IMG/VR virus record: IMGVR_UViG_3300028394_002328
Span: 271,036 to 335,035 of that record
Strand: one strand, 5' to 3'
Length of the DNA: 64,000 bases
Of this stretch, positions 12,837-27,252 are shown piece after piece (positions within the stretch are counted from its first letter, which is position 1; every line of letters begins with the position of its first letter). Below the pieces are notes generated by a model that was not told the origin of the DNA, ran no database searches, and saw nothing but the letters and a program-made list of their open reading frames with translations. Made by a program: the position numbers and the translations under genes.

Positions 12837-13439
12837 TTACCAACTAGCTAATACACAATATCTAGTATATACTTCTAATGGTAATGTCCAATCATCTTCT
12901 ATTTTAAATCCACGAGATACTAATTCTTTTATCAAAGGCTCGGTACTAGTAACAGTATTAATATGAGTATCTATTTGAAAATCTGTACTTTGTAAATAAA
13001 CATATCCTGATTCATACTTTTTAAAGTTTAACCAATCATAATTCATATGCTCACATGAGGTATTAACTATCAAGGTATTGTTCTTAATATTATCTTCCCA
13101 AGTATTACATTGCGTTGCATCGGCAATTATTGATTTAAAATCCCAATCATAGTTTAATTTTCTACTGAAATTAGCCCAAAAATGATCTAGTTCAATTCCT
13201 ATAGCACTTTTGATAATATCATGTTCATGTAACATATGGGGCAGCATACCATGCCACTGCCCCATAAAGATACAATAATAATCAGTTAAATTAGATAGGT
13301 GTTTAACCGCGCCAATCTTACTATGCAATTGTGAGTAAGTTAACCCATGTCTTAGATGCCTATGTGTGGCTTCATCAACATTTAAACCCCATTCACTAAC
13401 TTGCATGAGTCTCCCAATTGAATTGGCTAGTTTTTCCAT
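12837..13439 (-). CDS. Methyltransferase-like protein
   Basis: FMGQWHG glycine loop, IELD, IVNTSCEH. Confidence 0.6.
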   Translation of the reverse strand: MEKLANSIGRLMQVSEWGLNVDEATHRHLRHGLTYSQLHSKIGAVKHLSNLTDYYCIFMGQWHGMLPHMLHEHDIIKSAIGIELDHFWANFSRKLNYDWDFKSIIADATQCNTWEDNIKNNTLIVNTSCEHMNYDWLNFKKYESGYVYLQSTDFQIDTHINTVTSTEPLIKELVSRGFKIEDDWTLPLEVYTRYCVLASW

Positions 13440-13485
13440 ATACTATATTTAATATATGAGCTAGGTTTAATAATATAAATATTGT

Positions 13486-14157
13486 ATGCCAAAAATAAAT
13501 TATTTTTTAGATTCATACAAATATTTTTGCCAATTAAACCAAGATCCAATCACAGGTTCCGTATTAGACTATGGCTGTAACTATGGAATGTTTTTAGAAA
13601 GTAGCAGAAGTTTATTCTCTGAAAACATGTATACTGGTATAGATGTAGACTTAGAGGCATTGCAAGCTGGTAAGAAAATGTTTCCAAATGCAAAATTTAT
13701 TCATTATGACAAACATAATTTTATGTACAACCCAACCGGGTCTAGAAGCCTTTGGCCTGACATTAATGAACAATTTGATTGTATTATAAGTTATAGTGTC
13801 ATAACACATACCACAAAAGAAGACATGTTAGATGCTATTGCCTGGCTCTATACTAAGTTGAAATCAGATAAAAAAATGTTTATTACTTGGTTAGATCAAG
13901 AAAATAAAATAGCATTAGCTTACTTTTATCAAAAACGTATGAAAGATTTTGGTAGTTGTGATAGGATTCAAACAGAAGATTACGTTTATCTCATTGACAA
14001 TAAAACATCCAAAGTACCCAATGATGGGATGTTTTTAGCTTTTTACAAAAAAGAATATTTGGCTAGCTTGTTGTCCGATTATGATTTTTCTTTAGAGCAA
14101 TCACCTGATTTTACTAATAGATGTTTTCAAGACTGTATAATTATAAAGAAAATATAA
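13486..14157 (+). CDS. SAM-dependent methyltransferase
   Basis: VLDYGCNYG, YTGIDVD, FDCIISYSVITH. Confidence 0.85.
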   Translation: MPKINYFLDSYKYFCQLNQDPITGSVLDYGCNYGMFLESSRSLFSENMYTGIDVDLEALQAGKKMFPNAKFIHYDKHNFMYNPTGSRSLWPDINEQFDCIISYSVITHTTKEDMLDAIAWLYTKLKSDKKMFITWLDQENKIALAYFYQKRMKDFGSCDRIQTEDYVYLIDNKTSKVPNDGMFLAFYKKEYLASLLSDYDFSLEQSPDFTNRCFQDCIIIKKI

Positions 14158-14690
14158 TGAAATATTATTTTAAAGTTAATTTTTTAGAGACTAGGAAGTA
14201 CACTGATTATTTTTTAAAATTAATTTCCTCGACAGTTTTTATTAATAACAGTGTTGCTTCGGTGTCATTTAATATTAATGATCCGATGATAAAAGAAATT
14301 TCTTCAACATTGAAAGAACTGCAATTACCTATGATTGGTCAATTTATATTTTTTAAACATCACCGTAATCAAGATATACACAAAGAAGATATCAGATGTA
14401 GTTTAAATTTGCCTTTAATAGGATATGAAAACTCATTGATGCATTTTTATCAAATTAATGCTTTACCTATAAAGAAAAAAAGTGCTTATTATTATAAAGA
14501 AACTGATGAAAAAACAATAATAGAGACTTTACCAGGTACAAACGAATGGGTTTTGGTTGATTCTTCCGTACCACATTGCATTGTTAACAGCGATTTTAAT
14601 AATCCTAGATGTACGATAGCCTTAAGATTTTTAGGAAACCCGACACTGGAAGAATTGAAATTTAAAATTGAACAATTACAGCAACATTAA
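14157..14690 (+). CDS. Cupin/2OG-Fe(II) oxygenase-like protein (start MKYYFK)
   Basis: IHKED...SLNLPL...VPHCIVN...R pattern; TAATG coupling to the upstream gene. Confidence 0.6.
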   Translation: MKYYFKVNFLETRKYTDYFLKLISSTVFINNSVASVSFNINDPMIKEISSTLKELQLPMIGQFIFFKHHRNQDIHKEDIRCSLNLPLIGYENSLMHFYQINALPIKKKSAYYYKETDEKTIIETLPGTNEWVLVDSSVPHCIVNSDFNNPRCTIALRFLGNPTLEELKFKIEQLQQH

Positions 14691-16145
14691 TTTTTCATAA
14701 TATTGATTTTTTAATATTACCGTTTTTTCATCTAATTTTTTACCAAATGATTCAAAAGTTAAAGTATCATCTTGTAGAAATTTAAATAAATCTTCCATAG
14801 TATATCCTAAATTAAGAATTCTTCCTACCCAAGTAGCAGCGCCAAATTTATTTTTCTTTTGAACTCTTGGGTCGTTTCTAATATCTTTTACTAAAGCAAC
14901 TGCTTCTTGAAAAGTCATATCATCATTTTCCCACGGACGATCCTTTTCTATTTTAAACCCGAATTTTTTAGGATCCCTATCTATTTTACTAGAATTTCTT
15001 CCATCTGGAGAGTCTCTAACAGTAAGAGGCAAAAATCCAAATACATCAAGAGGACAATCATCACTAACTAAGTAATCTACGCTAGCCAGTATACTTTCCC
15101 TACTTTCACCAGGAAGTCCGGCAATAAAAGTACTACTCGCAATAATATTATTTTTCCATAACTCATTACAATAACTTAAAGTTTCTTTAATTCTATTTGG
15201 ACCCAGTCCTTTACCTATTTTTTTACCTGCTTCTTCATTCAGTGTTTCTATTCCAAAGTGAAGACTTTTTGCACCGCTTTCTAAAAGGAGTTCCCTCATC
15301 TCAGGAAACTTCCAAATTAAATCTAATCTCGCATAACTAGTATATGTTAATTTAAACGGTAATGTAGTTAACACACTATGTATGAATTCCATTTTAGGAA
15401 CACTTTCATTGATTAGTTCATCAGTAAACATGTAATGAGTAGTGCCATATAGTTCATAATTTCTAAGTAATTCTGATTTTAAAGTTTCTCCATTTTTTTG
15501 CCAATCACCTGCTTTTTTACCTATCAGGTCAAATCTGCAAAATGCACAACTAAAAATACACCCTCTAGCTATTTCCACAGGTAGAGATTCACCATGGAAA
15601 ATAATATCATGGGGTTCATATATAATTTGACTATGAGCAAATTGTTCTTGAGTATAAAAATAATCATTTCCGTCAATGTAAATACATTGGTCCTTTTTCA
15701 TTATTTTTATATCATCGCCGTCTTTAAGATGTCTAATCAATTTAATAATAACATTATCGGCTTTGTTTAATATAATGTAATCAGTTCCTGCCCAATAACA
15801 ATAGTCAGTTAGTCTAGCACCACCTAAACAAATTTTAACTTTTGAGTTTTTAGATTTAGCATAATTGGCTATATTAGTAAATTCTTCATTAGGTCTTCCA
15901 AAATTCAAAACTTTTCCGTTAATTCGTTTTTCCATTAGGGTAGCACCAAACCCCACTAATAAAGTGTCTTTAGTGACAAATTTATCTATGATTTTTTCTA
16001 ATTGGTCATATTGATAAAAACTAAAAAGATCAACAACTTGACAAGTATAGCCATATTTTCGTATTTCAGTAGCTACTTTATAAGTACCTGCATATTTTCC
16101 ATATCCATATGTGTCAGCAACGTCAGTAAATAATATTATCTGCAT
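14676..16145 (-). CDS. Cobalamin-binding radical SAM protein
   Basis: N-terminal B12-binding-like domain; ARGCIFSCAFC; FTDELIN; FGIETLN; GLPGES. Confidence 0.85.
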   Translation of the reverse strand: MQIILFTDVADTYGYGKYAGTYKVATEIRKYGYTCQVVDLFSFYQYDQLEKIIDKFVTKDTLLVGFGATLMEKRINGKVLNFGRPNEEFTNIANYAKSKNSKVKICLGGARLTDYCYWAGTDYIILNKADNVIIKLIRHLKDGDDIKIMKKDQCIYIDGNDYFYTQEQFAHSQIIYEPHDIIFHGESLPVEIARGCIFSCAFCRFDLIGKKAGDWQKNGETLKSELLRNYELYGTTHYMFTDELINESVPKMEFIHSVLTTLPFKLTYTSYARLDLIWKFPEMRELLLESGAKSLHFGIETLNEEAGKKIGKGLGPNRIKETLSYCNELWKNNIIASSTFIAGLPGESRESILASVDYLVSDDCPLDVFGFLPLTVRDSPDGRNSSKIDRDPKKFGFKIEKDRPWENDDMTFQEAVALVKDIRNDPRVQKKNKFGAATWVGRILNLGYTMEDLFKFLQDDTLTFESFGKKLDEKTVILKNQYYEKLMLL

Positions 16146-16214
16146 GTCATATTTCGATTGGTAAAAAGCCGTAGATAAATATACTTATCTACAGTAGCAG
16201 TTACAGATAATAAA

Positions 16215-16718
16215 ATGATAAAAATATTAGATCAAATTGAAGTAAGTAAAGTTTTAGAGGCATATTATGCTCTAGAAAACGGGATAGTTTGGACTGGATA
16301 TGGTCAGAATAGTAGACAGACAGGTCTTCAATATAAACTAAATGAGGATCCTTGGACAAGCGGTGTAGGTAAAAGTAAGGGACATGAGTTAGATTATGAC
16401 ATAATCAATCCCTTTTTTAAAGACACAATATTTGAAAATATTATTGAAAAGTATTCGTTAAAAAGAACTAGATTCATGTGGCTTGGGCCATATTCTTGTT
16501 ATAGTATGCATAGGGATTATACGATAAGGATTCATGTTCCAATAATAACAAATCCAGACTGCTATTTTGTTTTTAAATTAGGGGAAGTTATTCATTTGCC
16601 AGTTGATAGTGTTTACCAAGTTACTACTACTGAACTTCATACTTTTATTAATTGTTCCAATAGCTATCGATTACATTTAATAGGAATACCAACATTTGCT
16701 AATATTAGGTCAAATTAA
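16215..16718 (+). CDS. Asp/Asn beta-hydroxylase-like 2OG-Fe(II) oxygenase
   Basis: SMHRD..IRIHVPIITNP...LHTFINC..RLHLI. Confidence 0.75.
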   Translation: MIKILDQIEVSKVLEAYYALENGIVWTGYGQNSRQTGLQYKLNEDPWTSGVGKSKGHELDYDIINPFFKDTIFENIIEKYSLKRTRFMWLGPYSCYSMHRDYTIRIHVPIITNPDCYFVFKLGEVIHLPVDSVYQVTTTELHTFINCSNSYRLHLIGIPTFANIRSN

Positions 16719-16723
16719 ATAAA

Positions 16724-17338
16724 ATGTTTACAACTAAAAGTGTTTTTGACCAAGACTATCACCTAAGTCATAAAGAACAATTATTGAATTATTTTATTGC
16801 GGCTTATCAGGAAAAAGATCATCCGGGACATATTAATATGTGGGATGAAAATTGGGAAGAAAAAAATTTCACTTTACCTTATTTAATTTACAAAAGTGAA
16901 AGATTTAGAAATGGACACGGTGACATGCATATTATACTTGATGAGCAAGATAATATTATTGCCAATGCAGGAGTCAACATATCTGATTTTGATCCTTTTG
17001 TAGCTTTATCCGGTGTTAGGTCTTGGATAAATAAAGAACATAGAACGCAACTATTAATTGGAAAATATATCTTACCCATACAGTTGAGTTGGGCAAAAGA
17101 AAAAAATTTAAAGACTATTGCTATATCATTCAATGATTATAATAAAAATTTAATAAAACATATTACAAGATCGGGTTTAGGAATTAAAAAAAGACGTGGT
17201 CCACATAGTATGTTTTACAATGGTCAATATGAAGTTGAGTTCCCAGTGACTATTAATTATACTAAACAATGGGTAGTATACCACAAAATAGACGAAGATT
17301 ATATCCCAAATTGGGAATTAATAAGGTATGTTGAATAA
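16724..17338 (+). CDS. GNAT-like acyltransferase
   Basis: RSWINKEHR..LLIG..ILPIQL.WAK...I.ISFNDYN. Confidence 0.5.
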   Translation: MFTTKSVFDQDYHLSHKEQLLNYFIAAYQEKDHPGHINMWDENWEEKNFTLPYLIYKSERFRNGHGDMHIILDEQDNIIANAGVNISDFDPFVALSGVRSWINKEHRTQLLIGKYILPIQLSWAKEKNLKTIAISFNDYNKNLIKHITRSGLGIKKRRGPHSMFYNGQYEVEFPVTINYTKQWVVYHKIDEDYIPNWELIRYVE

Positions 17339-18096
17339 TGAAATATTTGGCCTCATCTGCACATAGTTTAAGTATAGTTCAATTATTATCTGTAATCCTA
17401 ACTATAATAGGGTTCAACTATTTTGATTTTAATTTAGTAAATTGCTCCTTAATATTTTTAGGTTATTTTATTTTTAGTGGTTTGGGTGTAAGCATGACAT
17501 TGCATAGATACTACTCTCACAAATCATTCGAATTTAGATATACATGGTTGAAATGGTTATTTACTATAGTAGCAGTATTAGCCGGACGAGGCAGCCCTGT
17601 TGGATGGGCTTATATACATCGATTACATCATAAATTTTCAGATACAGATAAGGATCCACATGGAGCTAAAACTGTAGGATGGAAAATAATATTCCCAAGT
17701 CTTGTAGAAAATTACAAAGATCCTATAGACAAAAAGGTTATCAAAGACTTCATGAATAAACCTCATATACTAATAAGTAGGTATTACATGGGTTTTATAA
17801 TATTATGGTCTGTTCTATTATTAATTCTGAGTCCTGCTATCTTTTATTTTTTGTATGTCATACCTGTGTTTTTGACTTTTGTAAGTCTAGATTTGTTTGT
17901 TTTATTAACACATAAATACGGGTACATTAGTCATAGTACCACCGACAACAGCAAAAATAATTGGTTTATATCATTGATTCTTTGGGGAGAGGGATGGCAT
18001 AACAATCACCATAACAACCCAAGAAAATGGAATTTAAAAGAAAATTGGTGGGAAATAGATTTATTATCATACTGCATAATGCTTGTAAAAAAATGA
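17338..18096 (+). CDS. Membrane fatty acid desaturase (delta-9-like), copy 1
   Basis: His boxes HRYYSH, HRLHH, HNNHH; DPH; transmembrane segments. Confidence 0.92.
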   Translation: MKYLASSAHSLSIVQLLSVILTIIGFNYFDFNLVNCSLIFLGYFIFSGLGVSMTLHRYYSHKSFEFRYTWLKWLFTIVAVLAGRGSPVGWAYIHRLHHKFSDTDKDPHGAKTVGWKIIFPSLVENYKDPIDKKVIKDFMNKPHILISRYYMGFIILWSVLLLILSPAIFYFLYVIPVFLTFVSLDLFVLLTHKYGYISHSTTDNSKNNWFISLILWGEGWHNNHHNNPRKWNLKENWWEIDLLSYCIMLVKK

Positions 18097-18860
18097 GTAA
18101 ACTTATCTCTAACAATACTCTAGTAACCCAACTATTTTTAATTATAGCAATTATAGGGGGAATCATTGGGCTCTATAACTATGAACTGACTGTAGACCAC
18201 ATGATGTTAATTGTTACTGGGTATTTTTTATATAGTTGCTTAGGCATAGTAATAACATTTCATAGGCAATTGACTCACCAAAGTTATAATACGTATCCTA
18301 TACTAACTAAAGTCTTTAGTTTTTTAGGTTGTATGGCCAATACAGGAAGTTCAATATCTTGGGTTGCTACGCATATTAAACATCATTTACATTCTGATAA
18401 ACCAGGCGATCCTCATAGTCCATGGATTTCAAAATGGAAAATATTCCTTCTTAATTACCCCAGTGACAGTGGAATAAAATGGAGAATGCGTAAACTTATC
18501 AGTGACCCTTTTCATTTATTTTTGCATAAATATTATAATCTCTTGATAGTATTATATAGTTCAGTGTTGTTTATATTAGGAGGTTGGAAATTAATGATAT
18601 TTTTACATTGGATACCAACTGTAGTAGTAGCGGTAATGAGCAATGTTGTAAACTATGCGGGACACAAAGATAACTGGTATGGATCATATAAAAACTTTAA
18701 GTTAAATGACCATAGTGCGAACAGTTGGGTATTCGCTATACCAAGCTGGGGTGAAACTTGGCACAACAATCATCATAGATATCCAAGAAATTATACCACT
18801 AGATATAATTGGTACGAATTAGATATATCTGGGCTAATTATTAAACTTATTAAAAAATAA
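18093..18860 (+). CDS. Membrane fatty acid desaturase (delta-9-like), copy 2 (start MSKLIS)
   Basis: HRQLTH, HIKHH, HNNHH; ATGA overlap with copy 1. Confidence 0.92.
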   Translation: MSKLISNNTLVTQLFLIIAIIGGIIGLYNYELTVDHMMLIVTGYFLYSCLGIVITFHRQLTHQSYNTYPILTKVFSFLGCMANTGSSISWVATHIKHHLHSDKPGDPHSPWISKWKIFLLNYPSDSGIKWRMRKLISDPFHLFLHKYYNLLIVLYSSVLFILGGWKLMIFLHWIPTVVVAVMSNVVNYAGHKDNWYGSYKNFKLNDHSANSWVFAIPSWGETWHNNHHRYPRNYTTRYNWYELDISGLIIKLIKK

Positions 18861-18862
18861 AA

Positions 18863-19375
18863 ATGGATTATTCAGATTATTTTACAATATTAAACATAGA
18901 TTTTCCAGTAAGGGAAAAACTGTATCATGAATTAAATTATGCTATTTCAAAAAATTTATTTTATATCAGTCCTACTGAACAAGTGCGATATAATATAAAC
19001 AAAGATTTAAGAAAAGAAATACAAGATATAATGCCGTTTAAAATTAGTGATTGTGGATTTTTTAAAAATGTTCCAAATTGGACCTATCCAGTTCATATTG
19101 ATGGGCAAAGACTTTTTGCAGTTAATATGTTAATGGTAGATGATCATGATGATTTTGAGGTAGTATTTTATGTAGATGATTCTAGTTTAGCAAATGATAT
19201 TGATGGCACTGATAAAGAAAAATTTCGCATCCCTTATGCAAAAGACCAACTTGTATTACTAAACACTAAGAAATATCATTCCGTGAGAAATATAAGTAAC
19301 ACTACAACAAGATATCTATTATCTATTGGTAATATAGATACTGGCTATCATGAAATTAAAAATAAATTTATTTGA
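18863..19375 (+). CDS. Cupin/2OG-Fe(II) oxygenase-like protein
   Basis: YPVHID...AVNML...YHSVRN...R. Confidence 0.65.
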   Translation: MDYSDYFTILNIDFPVREKLYHELNYAISKNLFYISPTEQVRYNINKDLRKEIQDIMPFKISDCGFFKNVPNWTYPVHIDGQRLFAVNMLMVDDHDDFEVVFYVDDSSLANDIDGTDKEKFRIPYAKDQLVLLNTKKYHSVRNISNTTTRYLLSIGNIDTGYHEIKNKFI

Positions 19376-20279: not shown

Positions 20280-21417
20280 TTTTCATTTTTCCTACTCTGT
20301 AAATTTTTTTAAATGATACGAGGCCCTCAGGACCGTTGTCATTTGTATACACATATTTACTAGCCATTTTAACCATAGAGTTTATTCCCTCTTTCCAAAT
20401 TTGGTAGGCTCTAGATTCTGTATGGTTGATTAAAAACCAATGGTCATACTCTCTATTCCAATCTAAGATTGGCTTATCAGCTTGAAACCAATTATTATTC
20501 CAAGTTGAATAAATTATATTTCTCAGCATTTTCTCATGAATAAGATTATAAACTTTAGTACCAATTGGTACAGTCCAAATTTTTTGATGTACAGGATTTA
20601 ACTCTAAGTATTTTTTAATAACATGTGCTTGTTTACATATTATTTCAAATGCATTTGGGTTCCAGTAAAAATACTCTACTGTTGCATTATCATATCCTTG
20701 AAGGTAATTTTCTACCCCCGAATTAGTAGCTCTATCGGTAAAACCAACAACAAAATCATTAAATTTATTAATAGCAGATCTAGGTTTACATACACCTAAT
20801 ATTACACCAATTTTTTGATTTTTATCTAAAACTTTTCTTACATCATCAATAGCAGCAATATCCCACCTGACCCCACTGACCGGGCTTAGTAATTCTCTCC
20901 GATTTTCAATCCATCCATCGTCATTGCTTTTTAAATAAGAATCAAAGACATGGTCAGTTAAATCCGATACCGTAATTTTTATATCAGGATATAAATTGTG
21001 AATATCTTTCAGCCTCGGTATTGTTTGTAAAACATGCTCAGAATATAATGAATTGGATGAAGATTGATCGTTTTTATCTAAGTTTTTTACTGAAACTGTT
21101 CCTTTTTCAAAATGAATAACTAGCAGTTCATCAACCTTTAAATTTTGACGAAGGAAGCTAGTTAACAAATTATGTGAGTCTGCTCCACCACTATATAGAA
21201 TTATAATATAATCATATTTTTCCCGCAATTCCTTGGCTCTTTTGTCATATAACTCATCAAGAGTTTGGTTAGGTTCTACTGTCCAATCAAATTTATCAAA
21301 AGCATTGTCATAAAACGCCCATTCTACTTCTTGATTAGTTTCGGTAGCATGAATGCAAGCTAAAATTTTATTAGTAAATGTTTTAGATCCTACACGGTAG
21401 TAGCTGTTATTTTTCAT
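20263..21417 (-). CDS. PP-loop (adenine nucleotide alpha-hydrolase) ATPase
   Basis: ILYSGGADS motif. Confidence 0.65.
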   Translation of the reverse strand: MKNNSYYRVGSKTFTNKILACIHATETNQEVEWAFYDNAFDKFDWTVEPNQTLDELYDKRAKELREKYDYIIILYSGGADSHNLLTSFLRQNLKVDELLVIHFEKGTVSVKNLDKNDQSSSNSLYSEHVLQTIPRLKDIHNLYPDIKITVSDLTDHVFDSYLKSNDDGWIENRRELLSPVSGVRWDIAAIDDVRKVLDKNQKIGVILGVCKPRSAINKFNDFVVGFTDRATNSGVENYLQGYDNATVEYFYWNPNAFEIICKQAHVIKKYLELNPVHQKIWTVPIGTKVYNLIHEKMLRNIIYSTWNNNWFQADKPILDWNREYDHWFLINHTESRAYQIWKEGINSMVKMASKYVYTNDNGPEGLVSFKKIYRVGKMKNESSN

Positions 21418-21462
21418 ATTATGTATTTATTGAGTAAATAATAGTAGTTTATATTTCATCGA

Positions 21463-22644
21463 ATGAATCCAAAAACCTGTATGTTTCCTTTCACTTCATT
21501 GAGTGTGTCGCCCCGAGGCGCAATCAGACCATGCTGCATGTATAATAGTCCTGATATGCCCACTTGGGAAAATATCAAAGACTTAACATCGGAAGTACCA
21601 TGGCCTAGCAAATCTATTAAGATACTTCAAGAAAAAATGTTGAGTGATCGCATAGAAGAATTAACTCCATTGTGCAACTCTTGTTGGGAACCTGAAAATG
21701 CAGGACTTGATAGTCATAGATTAAGATACCAAAGATTATTAGCACTTCCAAATGAAGAGTTAATTAAAACCCCTAAACTAACATTTTTAGATTTACAGTT
21801 TGGATACTTATGTAATTTAAGTTGTATTATGTGCCATCCCGAAGAAAGTTCACAGGTTCAAAAAACAATTTTCAAATTAATAGACAATACTTCAAATACT
21901 AAACAAAAAAAAATTTACCAATCTAAGGTAAATTTATATGACAACCATGATTGGACTGTAGATGAAAATTCGTATCAAAAAGTTTTGGAATTATGCCAGC
22001 CTGTCAAGAATATTAAAATATCAGGGGGAGAGCCATTTTTTAATCCAAAATTTAAACCTTTCTTAGAATTTTTATTATCAAAAAAAGTTCCAATTGAATA
22101 CTTGCATGTGACCACAAATTTAACTATATACGATAAAGACATTGTTGAACTGTTAAATAGATTTACTAATGTTAGATTTAGATTCAGTTTAGAATCAATA
22201 GGTAAAGAAGATGACTTTATAAGATGGCCTAGCAGATGGGAGGAAAAACAAGAAAATTTACATGCATATTTAAGTCAGTTACACACAAAAAACATTGTTT
22301 CTAGTACATGCATCCAAAGTTTAAATCTATTTTCTTTTTCAAATACTATTAAATTCTTGAAAAATTTACGTTATAATATCAATATTCAACAACAAATTGC
22401 TGAAAATTCATTAGCTGGGATTTATTACTCCGACAAACAATATATTGAACACTACTTAAAAAATAATGAAGCTAATTTTATATCTAAGTATTTAGAAAAT
22501 ATTATAACCCATATCAATGATCCTTCATTTCAAGTTAATTATTTTCTAGATATGGCCAAACTACAAAATAAAAATATACAAAACGAATTTCCAATTTGGT
22601 ATGAGTTTCATACCAAATATATTAGAGATTCAAATTCAACGTAA
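21463..22644 (+). CDS. Radical SAM protein with N-terminal SPASM/twitch domain
   Basis: N-terminal C..PF...RPCC...C..C; CNLSCIMC; SGGEPF. Confidence 0.88.
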   Translation: MNPKTCMFPFTSLSVSPRGAIRPCCMYNSPDMPTWENIKDLTSEVPWPSKSIKILQEKMLSDRIEELTPLCNSCWEPENAGLDSHRLRYQRLLALPNEELIKTPKLTFLDLQFGYLCNLSCIMCHPEESSQVQKTIFKLIDNTSNTKQKKIYQSKVNLYDNHDWTVDENSYQKVLELCQPVKNIKISGGEPFFNPKFKPFLEFLLSKKVPIEYLHVTTNLTIYDKDIVELLNRFTNVRFRFSLESIGKEDDFIRWPSRWEEKQENLHAYLSQLHTKNIVSSTCIQSLNLFSFSNTIKFLKNLRYNINIQQQIAENSLAGIYYSDKQYIEHYLKNNEANFISKYLENIITHINDPSFQVNYFLDMAKLQNKNIQNEFPIWYEFHTKYIRDSNST

Positions 22645-23338
22645 AGTTTGGATTTAGTGCGTGAAGATATTCGTAAAATGCATCATTTAATTTTGAATCC
22701 CGTTTTCTAAATGTAATAACTAATGCAATTCTTTTACCTGTTAAAAAATTAGCTCCATGAATAATATCGGTTCTAAAATAATACCAGGTTTTAGGTTTTA
22801 AAATCGTACTAGTTATTTCTTTATAACCTCTTATATCCCGTATATTTTTCATTGTTTCATGTTTATATAACGAGCTATTTGGATCATGATACCAACTTGT
22901 AATAATATTTTCACCGCCCAAATCTATAAAATATATAAGTTCACCGGCTCTTCCTTTATCAACATGGGGGGTTTGCCAACCATTTTTTTCCGTGGATTTG
23001 GGCCATGTTGTTTGAAGATGAATCATCCAATCGTCTCCGACCGAATCTTTATCCCCATTATATTTAAATTCAGAAAGTAAAGGAAAAGTGTTTTTAGACC
23101 ATTCAATCATAGGTTCTAATTCATTTGGATGTAGCTTATGATGTAAGAAATAAGCGACATTTGTAATTCTTCCATCATCAGTATCAACATATGGTCTTCT
23201 ATCAGGATCATTTATTTGATCTAATTCACTAGCTACTACTCGTTGCGGATCAGGTTCATAGTTTTTAGGAACAGGAGTCTCTAAATTTCGATTCCCTAAG
23301 TTCATATCCATATAGCAAAGAATTTTAGAATAGTCCAT
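22622..23338 (-). CDS. Cupin/2OG-Fe(II) oxygenase-like protein
   Basis: TPHVD...IYFID...IIHGA....R. Confidence 0.6.
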   Translation of the reverse strand: MDYSKILCYMDMNLGNRNLETPVPKNYEPDPQRVVASELDQINDPDRRPYVDTDDGRITNVAYFLHHKLHPNELEPMIEWSKNTFPLLSEFKYNGDKDSVGDDWMIHLQTTWPKSTEKNGWQTPHVDKGRAGELIYFIDLGGENIITSWYHDPNSSLYKHETMKNIRDIRGYKEITSTILKPKTWYYFRTDIIHGANFLTGKRIALVITFRKRDSKLNDAFYEYLHALNPNFTLNLNL

Positions 23339-23377
23339 TTTGTCTCATAAATATCTATTTATTATAAGAGAAGTTGA

Positions 23378-24322
23378 ATGTTTTTTACTGGCCATAATAA
23401 TTGGTATCAATGGGGATATGACAATTCAAATTGGTTAGGGCGACGGACATCAATAGATCAGACATTTTGTAGTAGATATGTCATTGACAAAATAAAATCA
23501 ATGACATTTGCAGAAGCTTTGGATTATAACTTAAAGACCTTTGTTAATGACTTTCCAAATGAAAAATATGCTTTATTATTATCTGGAGGATCAGAAAGTG
23601 AAACGGTATTTCGAACATTTATAAAAAATAAAGTTGACTTTACTCCATATATTTTTCGTTATGAAAACGACATAAACATTTACGATGTATCATACGCTAT
23701 TACACTGTGCGAATCACATGAGAAAAAATATAGGTTAATTGATCTAAATTTAAAAAAATTTTTTGAACATGGTGCCGAAAAAATAAGCGAATATGCTCAA
23801 ATTGACAACCCCCGTTTGTTACCACAATTAAAGTTTTTAGATTATATTGATGAAATGCCAATTGGCTGTCACGGTGAACCGAGCTGGCATAGGCTTAATC
23901 ATAGTTACGAAGAGCCTGGTATATGGGTTAATTCTGAATTTGAATTTGAAATGGGATGGGACAAATATATTCAACGCACCAATCGAACATCTATAATGTT
24001 ATGGTTTAAATATACCCCCGAACTTGCATTAGCATATAACCAAACACCGTGGATTAATACGTTAATAAATGACGGATTTTATGGTAAGCTTGGGCCTAGA
24101 AGTACAAAAATTCAAGCATATAAACAAGTTTACCCTGAAATGCTTTTTAGAAAAAAACAAACCGGATTTGAAAAAATTGAATTCGTTATTGACGAATTTG
24201 AAAAATTTTTATATCAAAAGTATAATGGATTTTTATACCGAGGAATAGTACAACGATCTAGAGAGGAAGTTTTTAAAATATTATTGAAAAATGTAAATAC
24301 TTTTATGACGTTACTGCCGTAA
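23378..24322 (+). CDS. PP-loop ATPase-like protein, copy 2
   Basis: LLLSGGSESE degenerate SGGxDS motif. Confidence 0.55.
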   Translation: MFFTGHNNWYQWGYDNSNWLGRRTSIDQTFCSRYVIDKIKSMTFAEALDYNLKTFVNDFPNEKYALLLSGGSESETVFRTFIKNKVDFTPYIFRYENDINIYDVSYAITLCESHEKKYRLIDLNLKKFFEHGAEKISEYAQIDNPRLLPQLKFLDYIDEMPIGCHGEPSWHRLNHSYEEPGIWVNSEFEFEMGWDKYIQRTNRTSIMLWFKYTPELALAYNQTPWINTLINDGFYGKLGPRSTKIQAYKQVYPEMLFRKKQTGFEKIEFVIDEFEKFLYQKYNGFLYRGIVQRSREEVFKILLKNVNTFMTLLP

Positions 24323-24629
24323 CTAATTGATGCGTAATATTATTTTCCAAACAATAAGCGTCTATTAAAGATTCAAATCTTGCCAAACCTAAAGGATCCG
24401 ATTTAAAGTTTAGATATTGCTCTTCACTTTGCCAAATATTATGCATAGTAAGAGTTAGATTATCTTCTGAATATTCAAACTGTGAGGTTAACCAAAACAT
24501 AGTCTGTACATAATTATTACTAAAGTTTATACAGTATTCAATTTCCTCCGGTGAAGAAAATGACCATTGTGGTATATAAAAATTTACTGAAGTGCTAGGT
24601 CTTACTTGAGTTCTTGTCACAGTGTACAT
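24303..24629 (-). CDS. Small hypothetical protein, possibly ABM/ferredoxin-like fold
   Basis: W.SEEQY motif; Shine-Dalgarno and TAAATA upstream. Confidence 0.5.
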   Translation of the reverse strand: MYTVTRTQVRPSTSVNFYIPQWSFSSPEEIEYCINFSNNYVQTMFWLTSQFEYSEDNLTLTMHNIWQSEEQYLNFKSDPLGLARFESLIDAYCLENNITHQLVTAVTS

Positions 24630-24666
24630 ACTATTCTCCCATTATAATGTATTTATTATAATTAGA

Positions 24667-24695
24667 ATTAAACCTTTGGTAACCAAAGGTTTAAT
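24667..24695. terminator. Perfect 13-bp inverted repeat (hairpin/terminator)
   Basis: ATTAAACCTTTGG-TAA-CCAAAGGTTTAAT. Confidence 0.7.
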
Positions 24696-24701
24696 AGTCC
24701 A

Positions 24702-24839
24702 TCACAGAAGTTCGTAGTCCTGTTTACCTACTCCACATTCAGGACAAGCAAAATCATCAGGTAAATCTTCCCAATGACCTTCTAGTTCTTCATTGTGGAC
24801 ATGACCACATACGATACAAACGTGTTCTTGATTAGCCAT
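24702..24839 (-). CDS. Rubredoxin, 45 aa (missed by ORF track)
   Basis: MANQEHVCIVCGHVHNEELEGHWEDLPDDFACPECGVGKQDYELL; two CxxCG motifs. Confidence 0.92.
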   Translation of the reverse strand: MANQEHVCIVCGHVHNEELEGHWEDLPDDFACPECGVGKQDYELL

Positions 24840-25290
24840 GAGTTAACTCCTCCAATTTTTGTAGATAGGCGGCCGCATGACGTTCTTCAACTCGCTTAAG
24901 AGCGGCAAAACGTTTTTCTGCCTTAGCTAAAATTTGTGCAAATTGTTCGGCATGCTCTCGGCTTTCTTCAATTTGTTCACCAAATTCTTTGACTGCATGA
25001 CCATACATTTCATCGGATGCTTGTCCTTGGAACGTTGGATACATTTCCATGTATTCGTAAGTTTCCCCTTCAATGGCTTTAGTTAAACATTCTACAGTAT
25101 TGGGCTTGCCAATAAGTAACTCAAGATGACCCCAAGCATGTTTGAGTTCTTGATCCGCTGTATGCTCAAAATGTTGGGCAATATCTTCATGCCCTTCTTC
25201 ACGGGCGATCCGAGCAAAATAGCGATATTTAATATGAGCCATTGATTCGCCTGCCAATGCGCTCTCTAAGTTCTTAAGTGTGTTTGACAT
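24832..25290 (-). CDS. rbr: Rubrerythrin (ferritin-like di-iron protein)
   Basis: ALAGES..Y, ELKHA, GETYE..MY, ESREHA. Confidence 0.9.
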   Translation of the reverse strand: MSNTLKNLESALAGESMAHIKYRYFARIAREEGHEDIAQHFEHTADQELKHAWGHLELLIGKPNTVECLTKAIEGETYEYMEMYPTFQGQASDEMYGHAVKEFGEQIEESREHAEQFAQILAKAEKRFAALKRVEERHAAAYLQKLEELTHG

Positions 25291-25322
25291 AATGTCTCCT
25301 TTGTGTGTGATGTTATTTAGTC

Positions 25323-25346
25323 AAAAAAGGCCGTGCGGCCCTTTTT
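25323..25346. terminator. Bidirectional intrinsic terminator
   Basis: A run-GGCC GTGC GGCC-T run. Confidence 0.65.
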
Positions 25347-25362
25347 ATCATTTTAAATTAGT

Positions 25363-25917
25363 TTAAAATGAGTGAGTGTACGCTAGGTTATAGCTGTGAT
25401 TGAAACTGTCACCACGAACTAGGTCATAACGAAGACCAACACTATCATGTTTGGTAATAGCATAGCTAACACCGGCACGAGCAGTATGGGTAGTGTCAAG
25501 ATCACCATTGTTACCAAAACCATTACGGAAACGATAACCAACCTTGGCAGTTAGCTTGTCAAACATAGTGTATGTAACGCCCGGCTCGACACTGTAGTAA
25601 CCAAAATTAGCGCCATTAGTGAACTTTTCACCTGTAGCAACACGGGTGTAAACACCAACTGGGCCAACTGGTAGTGAACCAGTTAAACCAACTTCAAGAC
25701 GGTCGCTAAGTGCTTTAGTGCCAGCCTGTTGGTAAGCTGTAAAGCCAATATCACCGGCAAACATTTTGCCAAATGATTCTTTAACGCTGAGTTGATAGTT
25801 GCTGCTGTCGCGGGCACCACGATCACCCTTTTGGATTTGATCTTCAAGGGTAATGCTAGCTGCATTGGCTAGACCAGTAACAGCCGCTAGTGCTGCGATT
25901 GCGAAAACTTTCTTCAT
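25363..25917 (-). CDS. Outer-membrane beta-barrel (porin-like) protein
   Basis: Signal peptide MKKVFAIAALAAVTGLANA; amphipathic strands; C-terminal YTHSF. Confidence 0.75.
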   Translation of the reverse strand: MKKVFAIAALAAVTGLANAASITLEDQIQKGDRGARDSSNYQLSVKESFGKMFAGDIGFTAYQQAGTKALSDRLEVGLTGSLPVGPVGVYTRVATGEKFTNGANFGYYSVEPGVTYTMFDKLTAKVGYRFRNGFGNNGDLDTTHTARAGVSYAITKHDSVGLRYDLVRGDSFNHSYNLAYTHSF

Positions 25918-25946
25918 ATAGATATCTCCTTTAAAAAGTTTCATAC

Positions 25947-25975
25947 AGTATATATTTATTCTAAAGTGGTGTCAA
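25947..25975 (-). promoter_or_regulatory. Sigma70 promoter with an overlapping TAAATA late core
   Basis: TTGACA-17 nt-TATACT; spacer ends ATAAATA. Confidence 0.75.
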
Positions 25976-26024
25976 TATAATTTTTACCCATAAAAAATGT
26001 ATAAATATTAAAAAAGGACAATAT

Positions 26025-26651
26025 ATGAGTGAGATTGTAATACCTTCAATTCGTGAAACATTGCGTATACAACGTTGGGACGATCATAGATATTATCATC
26101 ATAGCAGAATTAATCAATTCTTACATTTGATTTCGGCTACTAGTTTCTTAGTAGCATATGTATATTTGTTTGTCAACCCCGTAATCTCATCTTACATTGC
26201 TTGGTTTGTAGCTATGACTACACGCCAAATTGGGCATTTCTTTTTTGAACCCGATGGTTACGATGAATATAACAAGGCCACTTTTGAATACAAAGAAAAG
26301 ATAAAAGTTGGATTCAATCTCAAACGTAAACGAGTGTTACTAGCATGTTGGGCAGCAGTACCTATACTAGCTTACTTTGATGCCGAACTTTTTAACTTTA
26401 TCATGCCCGATGCTAGCCCAGATACACTGTTTAATCGTATTGGGTGGGGTTGGTTATGGTTGGGTGTAGCAGGTGTAGTATTTAGAATGATTCAACTTAC
26501 TGCTATTGAAAGTCGCCGTACTGCTATCACTTGGTGTATTAAGATCATTACAGATCCATTCCACGATGTCGTTATCTATCGTAAAAGTCCACTATATTTA
26601 ATGCAGGGACAACTCATTGACCCCGACTTAAGACAAGACTACGAAGATTAA
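26025..26651 (+). CDS. Membrane protein, Mpo1/DUF962-like
   Basis: YYHHSRINQFLHLIS and QIGHFFFE His pattern; 4-5 transmembrane segments. Confidence 0.55.
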   Translation: MSEIVIPSIRETLRIQRWDDHRYYHHSRINQFLHLISATSFLVAYVYLFVNPVISSYIAWFVAMTTRQIGHFFFEPDGYDEYNKATFEYKEKIKVGFNLKRKRVLLACWAAVPILAYFDAELFNFIMPDASPDTLFNRIGWGWLWLGVAGVVFRMIQLTAIESRRTAITWCIKIITDPFHDVVIYRKSPLYLMQGQLIDPDLRQDYED

Positions 26652-26655
26652 TTTT
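26634..26655 (+). repeat. 22-bp direct repeat (second copy 27265-27286) flanking a one-gene cassette
   Basis: caagactacgaagattaatttt at both positions. Confidence 0.9.
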
Positions 26656-26679
26656 CAAGACTTAGATATTAAATAACTG

Positions 26680-27252
26680 ATGTACTATTTAGAATTGCCT
26701 AATTTTCCAACAGATGTGTTGACCGAGCAGTATCAACGTCCAGGCTCGTATGATATTAAAGTTAATTATTGGAATGTTAAAATAGAATTTTTTAAAAAAC
26801 AGATAATTGATTTTTTTGTAAGTCATAATCTAGAATTAAAAGATGGAGAAATATTTAAGAAAAGTCCCGGAATAATAGGTATTGTTCATACTGATGTTGT
26901 TTGGGATAGTTTTCAATCTGCATGGACCCGTTGGCATTGTGCTGTTAATATTAACCTTGACAACACTAATTCATTGATGTATTGGTTTTCAACTACCGAT
27001 ACTGAAGTGTATCCCATGCCAGGAGCAACTGGATTAAGAGGAATTCATTATGGCACTAAAAATAATAACAACTTTCATGACCGTGATGAATATACAGTCC
27101 TCGATAGTTTTTGCATTAATGGTCCAACGCTAGTAAGAACCAGTGTTCCTCACTTGGTTAAGAATTTAGATAATAAAGATCGGTGGTGCCTTAGTCTAAG
27201 ATTTAAGGGAAACCCAACTTTTGAAGAATGTGCTAAGAAATTGCTCCTTTAA
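26680..27252 (+). CDS. Cupin/2OG-Fe(II) oxygenase-like protein
   Basis: IVHTD...AVNINL...VPHLVKN...R..LSLRF. Confidence 0.65.
   Translation: MYYLELPNFPTDVLTEQYQRPGSYDIKVNYWNVKIEFFKKQIIDFFVSHNLELKDGEIFKKSPGIIGIVHTDVVWDSFQSAWTRWHCAVNINLDNTNSLMYWFSTTDTEVYPMPGATGLRGIHYGTKNNNNFHDRDEYTVLDSFCINGPTLVRTSVPHLVKNLDNKDRWCLSLRFKGNPTFEECAKKLLL

What the first reader, a model, noticed from the sequence alone, without database searches (positions are those of the whole stretch)
12837..27252. BGC-like island of tailoring enzymes with no obvious scaffold gene
Seen: a B12 radical SAM, a SPASM radical SAM, five cupin/2OG-type oxygenases, two methyltransferases, two PP-loop ATPases, a GNAT, two desaturases and a Bug protein. 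More radical SAM, sulfotransferase-like and methyltransferase genes lie at 0-8.5 kb. Many have TAAATA late cores. No PKS, NRPS or clear precursor peptide is visible. Inferred: a late-expressed pathway modifying virion proteins, the host envelope, tRNA or a small signal molecule.
Basis: partly seen in the sequence, partly recalled or inferred. Interest (0 to 1): 0.68.

Follow-up and report, generated by a model that had tools for sequence, protein, structure and literature searches.

The report
Late-expressed enzyme guild in jumbo phage
A 14-kb stretch of a 335-kb freshwater jumbo phage holds about twenty intact enzyme genes (lipid desaturases, iron oxygenases, radical-SAM enzymes, asparagine-synthetase-like ligases, an exported solute-binding protein) that recur together in hundreds of uncultured large phages; its two ligases and its binding protein match no cultured phage, so it is a real, conserved viral enzyme kit whose substrate is still unknown, not a classical biosynthetic gene cluster.

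Summary
Window 12837-27252 is a densely packed, low-GC (26-32% against 37% for the genome) block of 20 genes in a 335-kb freshwater jumbo phage, beside the phage's whole tRNA array. The "SPASM" enzyme is an N-terminal-twitch radical SAM. The two PP-loop proteins are asparagine-synthetase-B-like synthetase domains without a glutaminase domain. One methyltransferase call and the "sulfotransferase-like" call found no support.

All genes are under purifying selection and keep their catalytic motifs. A T4-type late-promoter core (ATAAATA) is about 16-fold enriched upstream of genes and leads eight of the eleven island transcription units.

Across about 130 viral contigs two modules recur:
- a lipid-type operon (desaturase, GNAT, desaturase, cupins, FA hydroxylase, AsnB-like PP314, B12 rSAM);
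- an AsnB-like PP384 paired with an exported TctC, which is swapped as a unit between near-identical phages.

There is no scaffold gene or precursor peptide. The likeliest reading is late remodelling of host membrane or envelope lipids plus capture and amidation of a periplasmic carboxylate. The substrates are inferred, not shown.

The parts
12837..13439 (-).
   Evidence: No Pfam, PHROG or PDB match, singly or as a 9-sequence profile. Conserved GQWHG / IGIELD / NTSCEHM motifs resemble class I MTase motifs only by eye. dN/dS 0.07.
13486..14157 (+). Class I SAM-dependent methyltransferase
   Evidence: Methyltransf_23 6.7e-10 and three more MTase families over cut-off. TATAAATA at 13474-13481 just upstream.
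14157..14690 (+). Small Fe(II)/2OG-type cupin (the ORF opens at 14121; the likely start overlaps the upstream stop codon)
   Evidence: Paralogue of 26680-27252 (30% over 105 aa, 6e-7). A member of alignment A2 with the HxD/E...H...R pattern.
14676..16145 (-). Radical SAM enzyme of the B12-binding (class B) type
   Evidence: Radical_SAM 1.1e-12. NCBIfam PhpK-type 9e-21, lipid B12/rSAM 1.4e-11 and HpnJ 2e-10, all below their cut-offs. CxxxCxxC at residue 196, kept in 20 of 20 relatives. Present in 20 of 68 PP384 loci and 26 of 55 GNAT loci.
16215..16718 (+). Cupin, Asp/Asn-beta-hydroxylase-like; first gene of the five-gene plus-strand operon
   Evidence: Asp_Arg_Hydrox 2.2e-4, below cut-off. Invariant H99, D101 and H142 in 5 sequences. 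Weak profile link to A2. ATAAATA 40 nt upstream.
16724..17338 (+). GNAT-type acyl/acetyltransferase lying next to the desaturases
   Evidence: PHROG acetyltransferase 5.9e-5. PDB GNAT 6.7e-4. PF00583 on 13 of 101 homologues. Desaturases lie within 10 kb in 49 of 55 loci anchored on it.
17338..18096 (+). Membrane delta-9-type (SCD1/DesC-like) fatty-acid desaturase, copy 1
   Evidence: FA_desaturase 5.4e-17. HRxxSH, HRLHH and GEGWHNNHH boxes. Absent from the near-identical relative L009.
18093..18860 (+). Membrane delta-9-type fatty-acid desaturase, copy 2 (start overlaps the stop of copy 1)
   Evidence: FA_desaturase 3.1e-16. Aligned to mouse SCD1 residues 52-290, 1.7e-9. 33% identical to copy 1.
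18863..19375 (+). Small Fe(II)/2OG-type cupin
   Evidence: hhalign to the modelled cupin family: 95.4% probability, E 1.7e-8. Invariant H78, D80, H139 and R150.
19368..20279 (-). Exported TctC/Bug-type periplasmic solute-binding protein (an orphan: no TctA in the genome)
   Evidence: TctC 4.1e-16. PDB TctC, Bug27, BugD and terephthalate-binding protein at 1e-11 to 1e-9 over the mature length. The signal-peptide criterion is met by 35 of the 39 non-identical TctC-family proteins examined, including both copies in the window. No TctA in the genome.
20263..21417 (-). PP384: asparagine-synthetase-B-like ATP-pyrophosphatase (synthetase domain only), overlapping the TctC gene by 17 nt
   Evidence: AF2 pLDDT 88. 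VIA Z 11.8 to E. coli AsnB residues 121-515, then beta-lactam and carbapenam synthetases. SGGxDS invariant. 557 metagenomic relatives, none named. No match in 50,697 phage records. The nearest Atlas clusters are 99-100% viral.
21463..22644 (+). Radical SAM enzyme with an N-terminal twitch domain
   Evidence: NF033640 at 210.9 bits against a 170-bit cut-off. CxxxCxxC at 117 and five N-terminal Cys. Five tandem paralogues at genome 33967-40365.
22622..23338 (-). 238-aa cupin-like protein
   Evidence: hhalign to the cupin family: 78% probability, E 1.8e-5, with HVD...H...R aligned. No Pfam or PDB hit.
23378..24322 (+). PP314: second AsnB/QueC-like PP-loop enzyme
   Evidence: Atlas nearest clusters are viral with Asn_synthase/QueC hits, TM 0.85-0.88. 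It shares a structural neighbour with PP384. Present in 50 of 68 PP384 loci and 40 of 55 GNAT loci. No match in cultured phages.
24303..24629 (-). 108-aa protein, possibly an ABM-type monooxygenase fold
   Evidence: Aligns with a ~100-aa family found in 27 of 55 GNAT loci. The profile gives only weak hits to IsdI (E 0.005).
24702..24839 (-).
   Evidence: Open frame with CxxC...CPxC. Identical to the product of L005, which is annotated PF00301.
24832..25290 (-). Rubrerythrin
   Evidence: Rubrerythrin 4.5e-16. GC 42%, higher than the island core.
25363..25944 (-). Small exported outer-membrane beta-barrel
   Evidence: Porin_4 9e-6, below cut-off. Signal peptide and C-terminal Phe are seen in the sequence.
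26025..26651 (+). Mpo1-like (DUF962) membrane protein
   Evidence: Mpo1-like 8.8e-5, just below cut-off. TATAAATA at 26000-26007. dN/dS 0.03-0.08.
26680..27252 (+). Fe(II)/2OG-type cupin (the modelled representative)
   Evidence: AF2 pLDDT 81. Foldseek matches to FIH, NO66 and 1vrb with probability 1.0. VIA Z 9-11 to 2OG hydroxylases, ALKBH6/7, vCPH and AspH. H70, H158 and R168 invariant in 17 sequences.
1746..11538 (-). Context: tRNA array (17-18 genes) interleaved with accessory genes, including a second exported TctC (6446-7414) and an rSAM/SPASM-like gene (17-1054)
   Evidence: All 18 tRNAs of the genome lie here. tRNA genes also lie in 39 of 86 PP384 loci and 26 of 55 GNAT loci.

Best explanation
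The island is this phage's copy of an accessory enzyme guild found so far almost only on viral contigs. It sits in the plastic, tRNA-bearing part of large phage genomes and is transcribed from T4-type late promoters. It is built from two modules that recur independently.

Module L is a lipid-type tailoring set. Its parts are the operon cupin / GNAT acyltransferase / two SCD1-like delta-9 desaturases / cupin, the AsnB-like PP314, a class-B radical SAM, a twitch radical SAM, more Fe/2OG cupins, an ABM-like protein and a rubrerythrin-rubredoxin pair that could supply or buffer electrons. Most likely it desaturates, hydroxylates and otherwise decorates acyl chains of host membrane or envelope lipids, or of an N-acyl lipid made from them, during late infection.

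Module P is a two-gene cassette. An AsnB-like ATP-dependent carboxylate-activating enzyme (PP384, cytoplasmic) is translationally coupled to an exported orphan TctC binding protein. The TctC would dock on the host's TctAB permease to bring in a carboxylate, which PP384 then amidates or ligates. This is analogous to the way phage PstS boosts phosphate uptake.

Shown here: folds, motifs, export signals, selection, synteny, cassette exchange and promoter-motif enrichment. Inferred: substrates, timing, and any link between the two modules.
For: Lipid theme:
- Two desaturases with intact His boxes align to SCD1.
- Related islands add FA_hydroxylase, NMO/FabK-like, Rieske and DUF2061 membrane proteins.
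- The window adds an Mpo1-like protein, an OM barrel and rubredoxin.
- A phage delta-9 desaturase has been shown to be active (PMC5776448).

Conserved linkage:
- In 55 loci anchored on the GNAT gene: desaturase 49, cupin 41, PP314 40, B12 rSAM 26, FA hydroxylase 21. The order PP314 / FA hydroxylase / Des / x / Des / GNAT recurs.
- In 68 non-redundant PP384 copies: TctC adjacent in 25 and in the locus in 39; PP314 in the locus in 50.

Cassette behaviour: against L005 the neighbours are 96-100% identical in DNA, but 19.3-21.4 kb (exactly TctC plus PP384) is 67-78%, and both proteins are 63% identical.

Compartments and chemistry:
- 35 of 39 TctC copies meet the signal-peptide criterion, and the genome has no TctA.
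- PP384 has the AsnB synthetase fold with an invariant PP-loop.

Function kept: dN/dS 0.03-0.31 for orthologous pairs.

Late motif.
Against: - No substrate is identified for any enzyme.
- The modelled cupin matches protein, nucleic-acid and small-molecule 2OG oxygenases equally well (Z 8-11), so it does not point to lipids.
- PP-loop enzymes and rSAMs have no established role in acyl-chain tailoring.
- A near-identical relative does without one desaturase and one cupin, which argues against an obligate linear pathway.
- In some phages PP384 sits next to tail-fibre, glycine-rich and P4H-type oxygenase genes instead.
- The strong co-location with tRNA arrays is not explained by this reading.
- The host, and hence a TctAB partner, is unknown.
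Confidence: 0.4

Rival explanations
1. Post-translational modification of virion (or host) proteins. The Fe/2OG cupins hydroxylate residues, the AsnB-like enzymes amidate or cross-link side-chain carboxylates (as lasso cyclases do), and the rSAMs, methyltransferase and GNAT methylate or acylate. All are made late, together with the structural proteins.
For: - The late-promoter core is shared with fibre and portal genes.
- Structural neighbours of the cupin model include the protein hydroxylases FIH, NO66, YcfD, AspH and viral collagen P4H.
- In about a dozen loci PP384 follows tail-collar fibre genes, glycine-rich proteins and a P4H-type 2OG oxygenase.
- The genome carries many huge fibre paralogues.
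Against: - Integral-membrane desaturases, FA hydroxylase, exported TctC and an OM barrel have no place in cytoplasmic protein modification.
- No substrate protein is conserved next to the guild in most loci.
- The cupin fold match is generic.
Confidence: 0.2
2. There is no common pathway. The region is a hyperplastic dumping ground beside the tRNA array, where independently useful auxiliary genes accumulate. Co-occurrence would then reflect shared location, not shared substrate.
For: - Gene order and content are shuffled between phages.
- Single genes are lost or replaced between near-identical relatives.
- Strands alternate, and almost every unit has its own promoter core.
- GC is uneven along the island.
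- HNH endonuclease and tRNA genes lie alongside.
Against: - Reciprocal anchoring gives very high conditional co-occurrence (desaturase in 49 of 55 GNAT loci; PP314 in 50 of 68 PP384 loci), with recurring same-strand operons.
- PP384 and TctC are exchanged together.
- PP384, PP314 and TctC match no cultured phage, whereas generic AMGs do not show this.
Confidence: 0.2
3. Modification of tRNA or another nucleic acid or nucleotide. The PP-loop enzymes would act like TilS, TtcA or QueC, the rSAMs and 2OG oxygenases like MiaB, TYW1, TYW5 or ALKBH8, and the targets would be the adjacent phage tRNAs.
For: - The guild lies beside tRNA arrays in 39 of 86 and 26 of 55 loci, 21 of them with 9-30 tRNAs.
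- Related loci carry T4 RNA ligase, a Pnk-like kinase, metallophosphatase and DSP phosphatase genes.
- Some PP314 relatives hit QueC.
- TYW5 and ALKBH8 are among the cupin's fold matches.
Against: - PP384 matches AsnB and beta-lactam synthetase (Z 10-12) clearly better than TilS, MnmA, TtuA or QueC-type enzymes (Z about 7).
- There is no RNA-binding domain.
- The membrane desaturases and exported proteins do not fit.
- tRNA arrays mark plastic regions in T4-like phages anyway (my own knowledge).
Confidence: 0.08
4. A RiPP-like or other natural-product cluster whose precursor peptide or scaffold enzyme has not been recognised.
For: - B12 rSAM, twitch/SPASM rSAMs, 2OG hydroxylases, a methyltransferase, a GNAT and AsnB-like (lasso-cyclase-like) enzymes are all typical RiPP tailoring enzymes.
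- The upstream rSAM at 17-1054 gives sub-threshold hits to many peptide maturases.
Against: - No PKS, NRPS, RRE, leader peptidase or transporter was found.
- No conserved short ORF lies in the few intergenic gaps; the largest is 713 nt and holds only unconvincing frames.
- No small family sits consistently next to the rSAMs.
- Membership is variable.
Confidence: 0.07

Closest known systems
Cyanophage-encoded DesC-like delta-9 lipid desaturases (vFAD; PMC5776448)
   Same: Phage-borne membrane delta-9 desaturases with the three His boxes. They were shown to desaturate C16 chains when expressed in yeast.
   Different: Here there are two diverged copies (33% identical) next to a GNAT inside a five-gene operon, linked to cupins, AsnB-like enzymes and rSAMs. 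The phage is a freshwater jumbo phage, not a cyanomyophage. There is no nucleotide match to any cultured phage. Activity was not tested.
Asparagine synthetase B / beta-lactam synthetase / carbapenam synthetase
   Same: PP384 has the same synthetase-domain fold (Z 11.8-8.8, 247-285 residues aligned) and the same PP-loop. This implies ATP-dependent adenylation of a carboxylate followed by attack of an amine.
   Different: There is no N-terminal glutaminase domain, identity is 6-10%, and there is no Pfam Asn_synthase hit. The family is seen almost only on viral contigs. The substrate is unknown.
Tripartite tricarboxylate transporter binding proteins (TctC / Bug family)
   Same: Full-length homology to solved TctC, Bug27, BugD and the terephthalate-binding protein, a signal peptide, and the GGxxD motif.
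   Different: It is phage-encoded and an orphan, with no TctA/B partner. It is coupled to an AsnB-like gene rather than to a permease.
Phage PstS and similar binding-protein auxiliary genes (my own knowledge)
   Same: A phage-encoded periplasmic binding protein that would use the host's membrane permease.
   Different: A different transporter family and ligand class. This is an analogy only, and nothing was tested here.
Hypervariable islands rich in 2OG-Fe(II) oxygenases in T4-like cyanophages (my own knowledge)
   Same: Clusters of small 2OG oxygenases of unknown substrate in a plastic region of T4-related phages, with T4-type late promoters.
   Different: This guild adds AsnB-like enzymes, TctC, desaturases and rSAMs. 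Its two AsnB-like enzymes and its TctC match no cultured phage record.
Virus-encoded sphingolipid pathway of Emiliania huxleyi virus (my own knowledge)
   Same: A precedent for a virus carrying a multi-enzyme lipid pathway with desaturase and acyltransferase steps.
   Different: That is a eukaryotic virus with a defining serine palmitoyltransferase. No such committing enzyme is present here.

Membership tests
Scaffold-based biosynthetic gene cluster (PKS, NRPS or RiPP) | A scaffold synthase or a precursor peptide gene | tested here: not met
   Pfam and NCBIfam scans of all ORFs and a small-ORF scan of the intergenic gaps found none.
Scaffold-based biosynthetic gene cluster (PKS, NRPS or RiPP) | A stable gene set inherited together | tested here: inconclusive
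   Sub-clusters recur, but the full set and its order vary, even between near-identical relatives.
Delta-9 acyl-CoA / acyl-lipid desaturase (PF00487, SCD1/DesC type) | Family score over cut-off and three His boxes | tested here: met
   62.8 and 60.4 bits against a 29.7-bit cut-off. The boxes are present and the proteins align to SCD1.
Delta-9 acyl-CoA / acyl-lipid desaturase (PF00487, SCD1/DesC type) | Delta-9 regiospecificity on an acyl substrate | not testable with these tools
   This needs expression followed by fatty-acid analysis.
TctC / Bug solute-binding protein of TTT transporters | Pfam TctC over cut-off, homology to solved members, export signal | tested here: met
   59.7 bits against 27. 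PDB matches at 1e-11. 35 of 39 family copies meet the signal-peptide criterion.
TctC / Bug solute-binding protein of TTT transporters | Cognate TctA/TctB permease | tested here: not met
   There is no TctA match in the 335-kb genome. It would have to be the host's.
Asparagine synthetase B family | PP-loop and synthetase-domain fold | tested here: met
   SGGxDS is invariant. Z 11.8 to 1ct9 over 285 residues.
Asparagine synthetase B family | N-terminal class II glutamine amidotransferase domain; Pfam Asn_synthase score | tested here: not met
   The match starts at AsnB residue 121 and no glutaminase domain is present. There is no Pfam or NCBIfam hit.
Class B (B12-binding) radical SAM methyltransferase | CxxxCxxC radical SAM core | tested here: met
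   Pfam 48.9 bits. The motif is at residue 196 and is kept in 20 of 20 relatives.
Class B (B12-binding) radical SAM methyltransferase | Recognisable N-terminal cobalamin-binding domain; a named family's cut-off | tested here: inconclusive
   NCBIfam matches to B12/rSAM families extend from residue 22 but are all far below their cut-offs. Pfam B12-binding is not significant.
N-terminal twitch radical SAM (NF033640) | Family cut-off, core motif, N-terminal Cys cluster | tested here: met
   210.9 bits against 170. CxxxCxxC at residue 117. Five Cys in the first 90 residues.
Fe(II)/2-oxoglutarate oxygenase (cupin/DSBH) | DSBH fold with an HxD/E...H triad and a basic 2OG-binding residue | tested here: met
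   Model pLDDT 81. Z 9-11 to many 2OG oxygenases. H70, H158 and R168 are invariant. The role of R168 is inferred.
Fe(II)/2-oxoglutarate oxygenase (cupin/DSBH) | A Pfam family score over cut-off | tested here: not met
   Only Asp_Arg_Hydrox at 21.5 against 22.6 bits for one of the five. The others have no hit.
GNAT acyltransferase | Match to GNAT profiles | tested here: inconclusive
   The protein itself has no Pfam hit. Support comes from a PHROG hit at 5.9e-5, a PDB profile hit at 6.7e-4, and PF00583 on 13 of 101 homologues.
T4-type late transcription unit | TATAAATA-like core placed 10-30 nt upstream of genes, shared with structural genes | tested here: met
   58 of 351 genes against about 3.5 expected. 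The position peak is at -10 to -30. The core precedes portal and fibre genes and eight island units.
T4-type late transcription unit | A gp55-type late sigma factor in the genome; late timing of the transcripts | not tested
   No reference sequence or RNA data were to hand.

The most novel reading that the evidence does not exclude
Large freshwater phages carry a virus-specific lipid pathway. Its enzymes are two desaturases, a GNAT N-acyltransferase, an FA hydroxylase, Fe/2OG cupins, an AsnB-like amide synthetase and a B12 radical SAM. It would make a modified N-acyl or amidated lipid that the uninfected host does not make, as coccolithoviruses make their own sphingolipids. It would be fed by a fast-evolving module of an exported binding protein and an amide ligase that captures a periplasmic carboxylate.
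Probability: 0.2. Interest if true: 0.8.

Novelty: new variant of a known kind. Interest (0 to 1): 0.6.

Why it matters
Accessory metabolic islands in phages are well known. This particular guild, however, has at least 557 protein clusters of PP384 relatives and at least 244 IMG/VR stretches, and its two AsnB-like enzymes and its TctC have no counterpart in 50,697 cultured phage records. I found no description of it in the literature I searched.

It offers two sharply testable units:
- a five-gene desaturase-GNAT operon;
- a two-gene ligase plus binding-protein cassette that recombines as a unit.

If the lipid reading is right, abundant freshwater phages rewrite host membrane chemistry late in infection. 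If the TctC reading is right, phages extend the 'borrowed binding protein' strategy beyond phosphate to organic acids. Either result would give functions to several large virus-only protein families.

Tried and rejected
- Nucleotide searches of the island and of the desaturase-GNAT segment against cultured phages: no match.
- tblastn of PP384 and PP314 against cultured phages: no match. TctC gave only two weak partial hits.
- Scan of 185,579 species genomes for PP384: one hit, on a 23-kb MAG contig with 28 tRNAs that looks like a mis-binned phage. It therefore gives no host evidence.
- PDB sequence searches for the 200-aa, 238-aa and 293-aa proteins and for the cupin profile: nothing usable. 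The methyltransferase call for 12837-13439 and the sulfotransferase call for 4674-6469 therefore stay unverified.
- Small-ORF search for a precursor peptide: nothing convincing.
- Rfam scan of 1-32 kb: only tRNAs.
- Literature searches for this gene combination in jumbo or huge phages, and two freshwater jumbo-phage papers: no mention.
- Context of the twitch rSAM relatives in Vibrio phage K566: uninformative hypothetical proteins.
- Complex prediction was not used, because the signal peptide puts TctC in a different compartment from PP384 and I do not claim that they bind.
- The search of protein representatives was not used, because the word search already gave ample relatives.
- Carotenoid ketolase/hydroxylase and sphingolipid desaturase readings of the desaturases were considered and dropped, because the His boxes are of the SCD1/DesC type.

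Full report
WHERE THE WINDOW LIES. The window is the last 64 kb of a 335,035-bp IMG/VR virus record estimated to be 95% complete. The major head protein (53457-54653) and the portal match PHROG head families. The head protein is 62-67% identical to those of Vibrio phage 2.275.O, Pseudomonas phage PA5oct and related jumbo myoviruses. The DNA recurs in 21 freshwater or metagenome sequencing runs from 18 studies, and none of them is RNA. The host has two membranes, because the island encodes proteins with classical signal peptides and an outer-membrane barrel.

CHECKING THE OBSERVATION. The ORF map fits the stated limits exactly. The block 12.8-24.6 kb has 26-32% GC per gene against 37% for the genome. 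The rubrerythrin and the barrel protein are at 42-44%.

Verified by family scans, motifs or folds:
- a methyltransferase at 13486;
- a radical SAM whose best relatives are all B12-binding families, though below their cut-offs;
- a radical SAM that reaches the cut-off of NF033640, the N-terminal-twitch family;
- two SCD1-like desaturases;
- a TctC/Bug protein;
- two PP-loop proteins;
- a GNAT;
- five small cupins.

For the cupins I aligned 17 relatives. H70, H158 and R168 are invariant. The AlphaFold model (pLDDT 81) is a double-stranded beta-helix that matches many Fe/2OG oxygenases at Z 9-11. Profile comparison ties in the 170-aa family (95%) and the 238-aa family (78%), and the 167-aa family only weakly.

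Not verified: the 200-aa protein as a methyltransferase and the 'sulfotransferase-like' paralogues at 4674-6469.

All 18 tRNA genes of the genome lie immediately to the left of the island.

THE PP-LOOP PROTEINS. PP384 (20263-21417) has no Pfam, NCBIfam or PHROG hit. It does have 557 relatives at E<=1e-3 in the metagenomic protein collection, none of them named. A model built on 27 relatives (pLDDT 88) aligns best with the C-terminal synthetase domain of E. coli and human asparagine synthetase (Z 11.2-11.8). Next come beta-lactam synthetase, carbapenam synthetase and TsnB9. GMP and NAD synthetases, LarE, TilS and QueC-like enzymes follow at Z about 7. It lacks the glutaminase domain. PP314 resembles viral clusters with Asn_synthase/QueC hits and shares a structural neighbour with PP384, although the two are not alignable pairwise beyond the PP-loop. 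Neither is found in 50,697 cultured phage records. Among 185,579 species genomes only one MAG contig carries PP384, and that contig has 28 tRNAs.

CONSERVATION AND LINKAGE. I anchored on PP384 and fetched 78 IMG/VR loci plus contigs from other collections. I clustered all their ORFs. Among 68 non-redundant PP384 copies:
- PP314 is in the locus in 50 and adjacent in 25;
- TctC is in the locus in 39 and adjacent in 25;
- an NMO/FabK-like FMN protein is in 33;
- desaturases are in 26, the twitch rSAM in 21, and the B12 rSAM in 20;
- further cupins, FA_hydroxylase, DUF2061, a Rieske oxygenase, DSP phosphatase and GNATs also recur.

I then anchored reciprocally on the GNAT gene and fetched 55 loci. 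Desaturases are present in 49 (111 copies), the cupin family in 41, PP314 in 40, the ~100-aa family in 27, the B12 rSAM in 26, PP384 in 25 and FA_hydroxylase in 21. Same-strand runs such as PP314 / FA hydroxylase / Des / x / Des / GNAT recur. Even so, order and membership are fluid.

MICRO-EVOLUTION. Two close relatives are informative. Against L005 most of the island is 96-100% identical in DNA. Positions 19.3-21.4 kb, which are exactly TctC plus PP384, drop to 67-78%, and both proteins are 63% identical. This is a cassette replacement. L009 has the window's cassette at about 100% identity but lacks desaturase copy 1 and the 170-aa cupin. For every orthologous pair dN/dS is 0.03-0.31. Catalytic motifs are widely kept among relatives.

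EXPRESSION SIGNALS. TATAAATA occurs only 4 times in the window against 12.5 expected. All four copies sit at gene starts: three in the short spacer upstream, and the fourth, at the portal gene, just inside the longest ORF's start. In the whole genome ATAAATA lies within 60 nt upstream of 58 of 351 genes, against about 3.5 expected, and peaks at -10 to -30. It precedes the portal gene, several fibre genes, and eight of the eleven island transcription units. Late expression is therefore a reasonable inference, but it has not been shown.

WHAT IT MOST LIKELY DOES. I read the island as two modules.

Module L has SCD1-type desaturases with intact di-iron ligands, next to an acyltransferase. In relatives it is joined by FA_hydroxylase, FabK-like, Rieske and DUF2061 membrane proteins. 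In the window it is joined by an Mpo1-like protein and rubredoxin. This points to acyl-chain chemistry at the membrane. A phage delta-9 desaturase has been shown to be active (PMC5776448).

Module P couples a cytoplasmic carboxylate-adenylating enzyme to an exported TctC, and 35 of the 39 family copies examined meet the signal-peptide criterion. The genome has no TctA, so an import role would need the host permease. The joint replacement of the pair suggests that they share a ligand.

I put this combined reading at 0.4. Rivals are protein modification (0.2), a mere plastic region of unrelated auxiliary genes (0.2), tRNA or nucleic-acid modification (0.08) and an unrecognised RiPP or natural-product cluster (0.07). 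The tRNA co-location stands out: 39 of 86 and 26 of 55 loci carry tRNAs, and 21 of them carry 9-30. My preferred reading does not explain it.

COMPARISON AND NOVELTY. Each enzyme belongs to, or resembles, a known superfamily, and phage accessory islands rich in oxygenases are a known kind of feature. New here are the specific, widespread guild found almost only on viral contigs, its two recurrent modules, and the TctC-ligase cassette. I found no description of it. I therefore rate it a new variant of a known kind, with interest 0.6.

LIMITS. No substrate, host or transcript evidence is available. ORF families were defined by my own clustering (BLASTP and HMMs). The loci were chosen by anchor genes, so co-occurrence frequencies are conditional, not population-wide.

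Noticed in passing
window 1746-11538 (and genome 270988-271061): All 18 tRNA genes of the 335-kb genome lie in one array directly left of the island. They are interleaved with accessory genes: an alpha/beta hydrolase (UPF0227), a second exported TctC, a GT2 fragment, an rSAM/SPASM-like gene and an HNH endonuclease.
   Followed up: partly
genome 33967-40365 (L002:6067-12465): Five tandem paralogues of the N-terminal-twitch radical SAM (30-47% identical among four of them; the fifth is more distant) are related to window 21463-22644. Vibrio phage K566 also carries several copies.
   Followed up: partly
genome 41314-66661 (L002, L003): A sugar-tailoring cluster lies next to the tandem rSAMs. It holds an NDP-sugar C-methyltransferase (Methyltransf_13/14), an NAD epimerase/dehydratase, a UDP-glucose/GDP-mannose dehydrogenase fusion, a carbamoyltransferase, a 719-aa B12-binding rSAM and a five-member paralogue family of unknown function. 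This suggests phage-made glycans.
   Followed up: partly
genome 8717-27751, 57810-64706, 133516-141378, 176765-181792: Very large ORFs (6344, 2298, 2620 and about 1675 aa) and a large family of fibre-like paralogues at 133-203 kb. Several of them are preceded by the ATAAATA core.
   Followed up: no
window 4674-5555 and 5573-6469: Tandem paralogues (55% identical) with the lowest GC in the window (25-28%). They carry an N-terminal PGGGGGD motif and match no family.
   Followed up: partly
window 50590-52575 and 52572-53327: Two adjacent paralogues (61% over 244 aa) just upstream of the major head gene. The longer one has a C-terminal part that hits a PHROG methyltransferase family (1.5e-15).
   Followed up: no
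window 28290-30671: A 793-aa protein with a signal peptide and long Ser/Thr/Gln/Ala-rich stretches, following two coiled-coil membrane-anchored proteins (27279-28288). This may be a lysis or envelope-associated set at the island's right border.
   Followed up: no
L087 (NZ_JBBAKG010000090.1, MAG labelled Haliscomenobacter): The only 'bacterial' genome hit for PP384 is a 23-kb contig with 28 tRNA genes in the 17 kb held. It is most likely a phage contig binned into the MAG, so it should not be used as host evidence.
   Followed up: partly
L022-L026, L046, L057, L059, L061, L070 and others: In one group of viral contigs PP384 follows tail-collar fibre genes, glycine-rich proteins, a P4H-type 2OG oxygenase and a 150-aa family that duplicates together with PP384. 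This context favours protein modification.
   Followed up: partly
L008, L089, L088: Related guild-bearing contigs of 217-351 kb carry eIF-1a/IF1-like, Rpb6/omega-like, T4 RNA ligase 1, Pnk-like kinase and metallophosphatase genes near the guild. These are translation and RNA-repair genes typical of huge phages.
   Followed up: no
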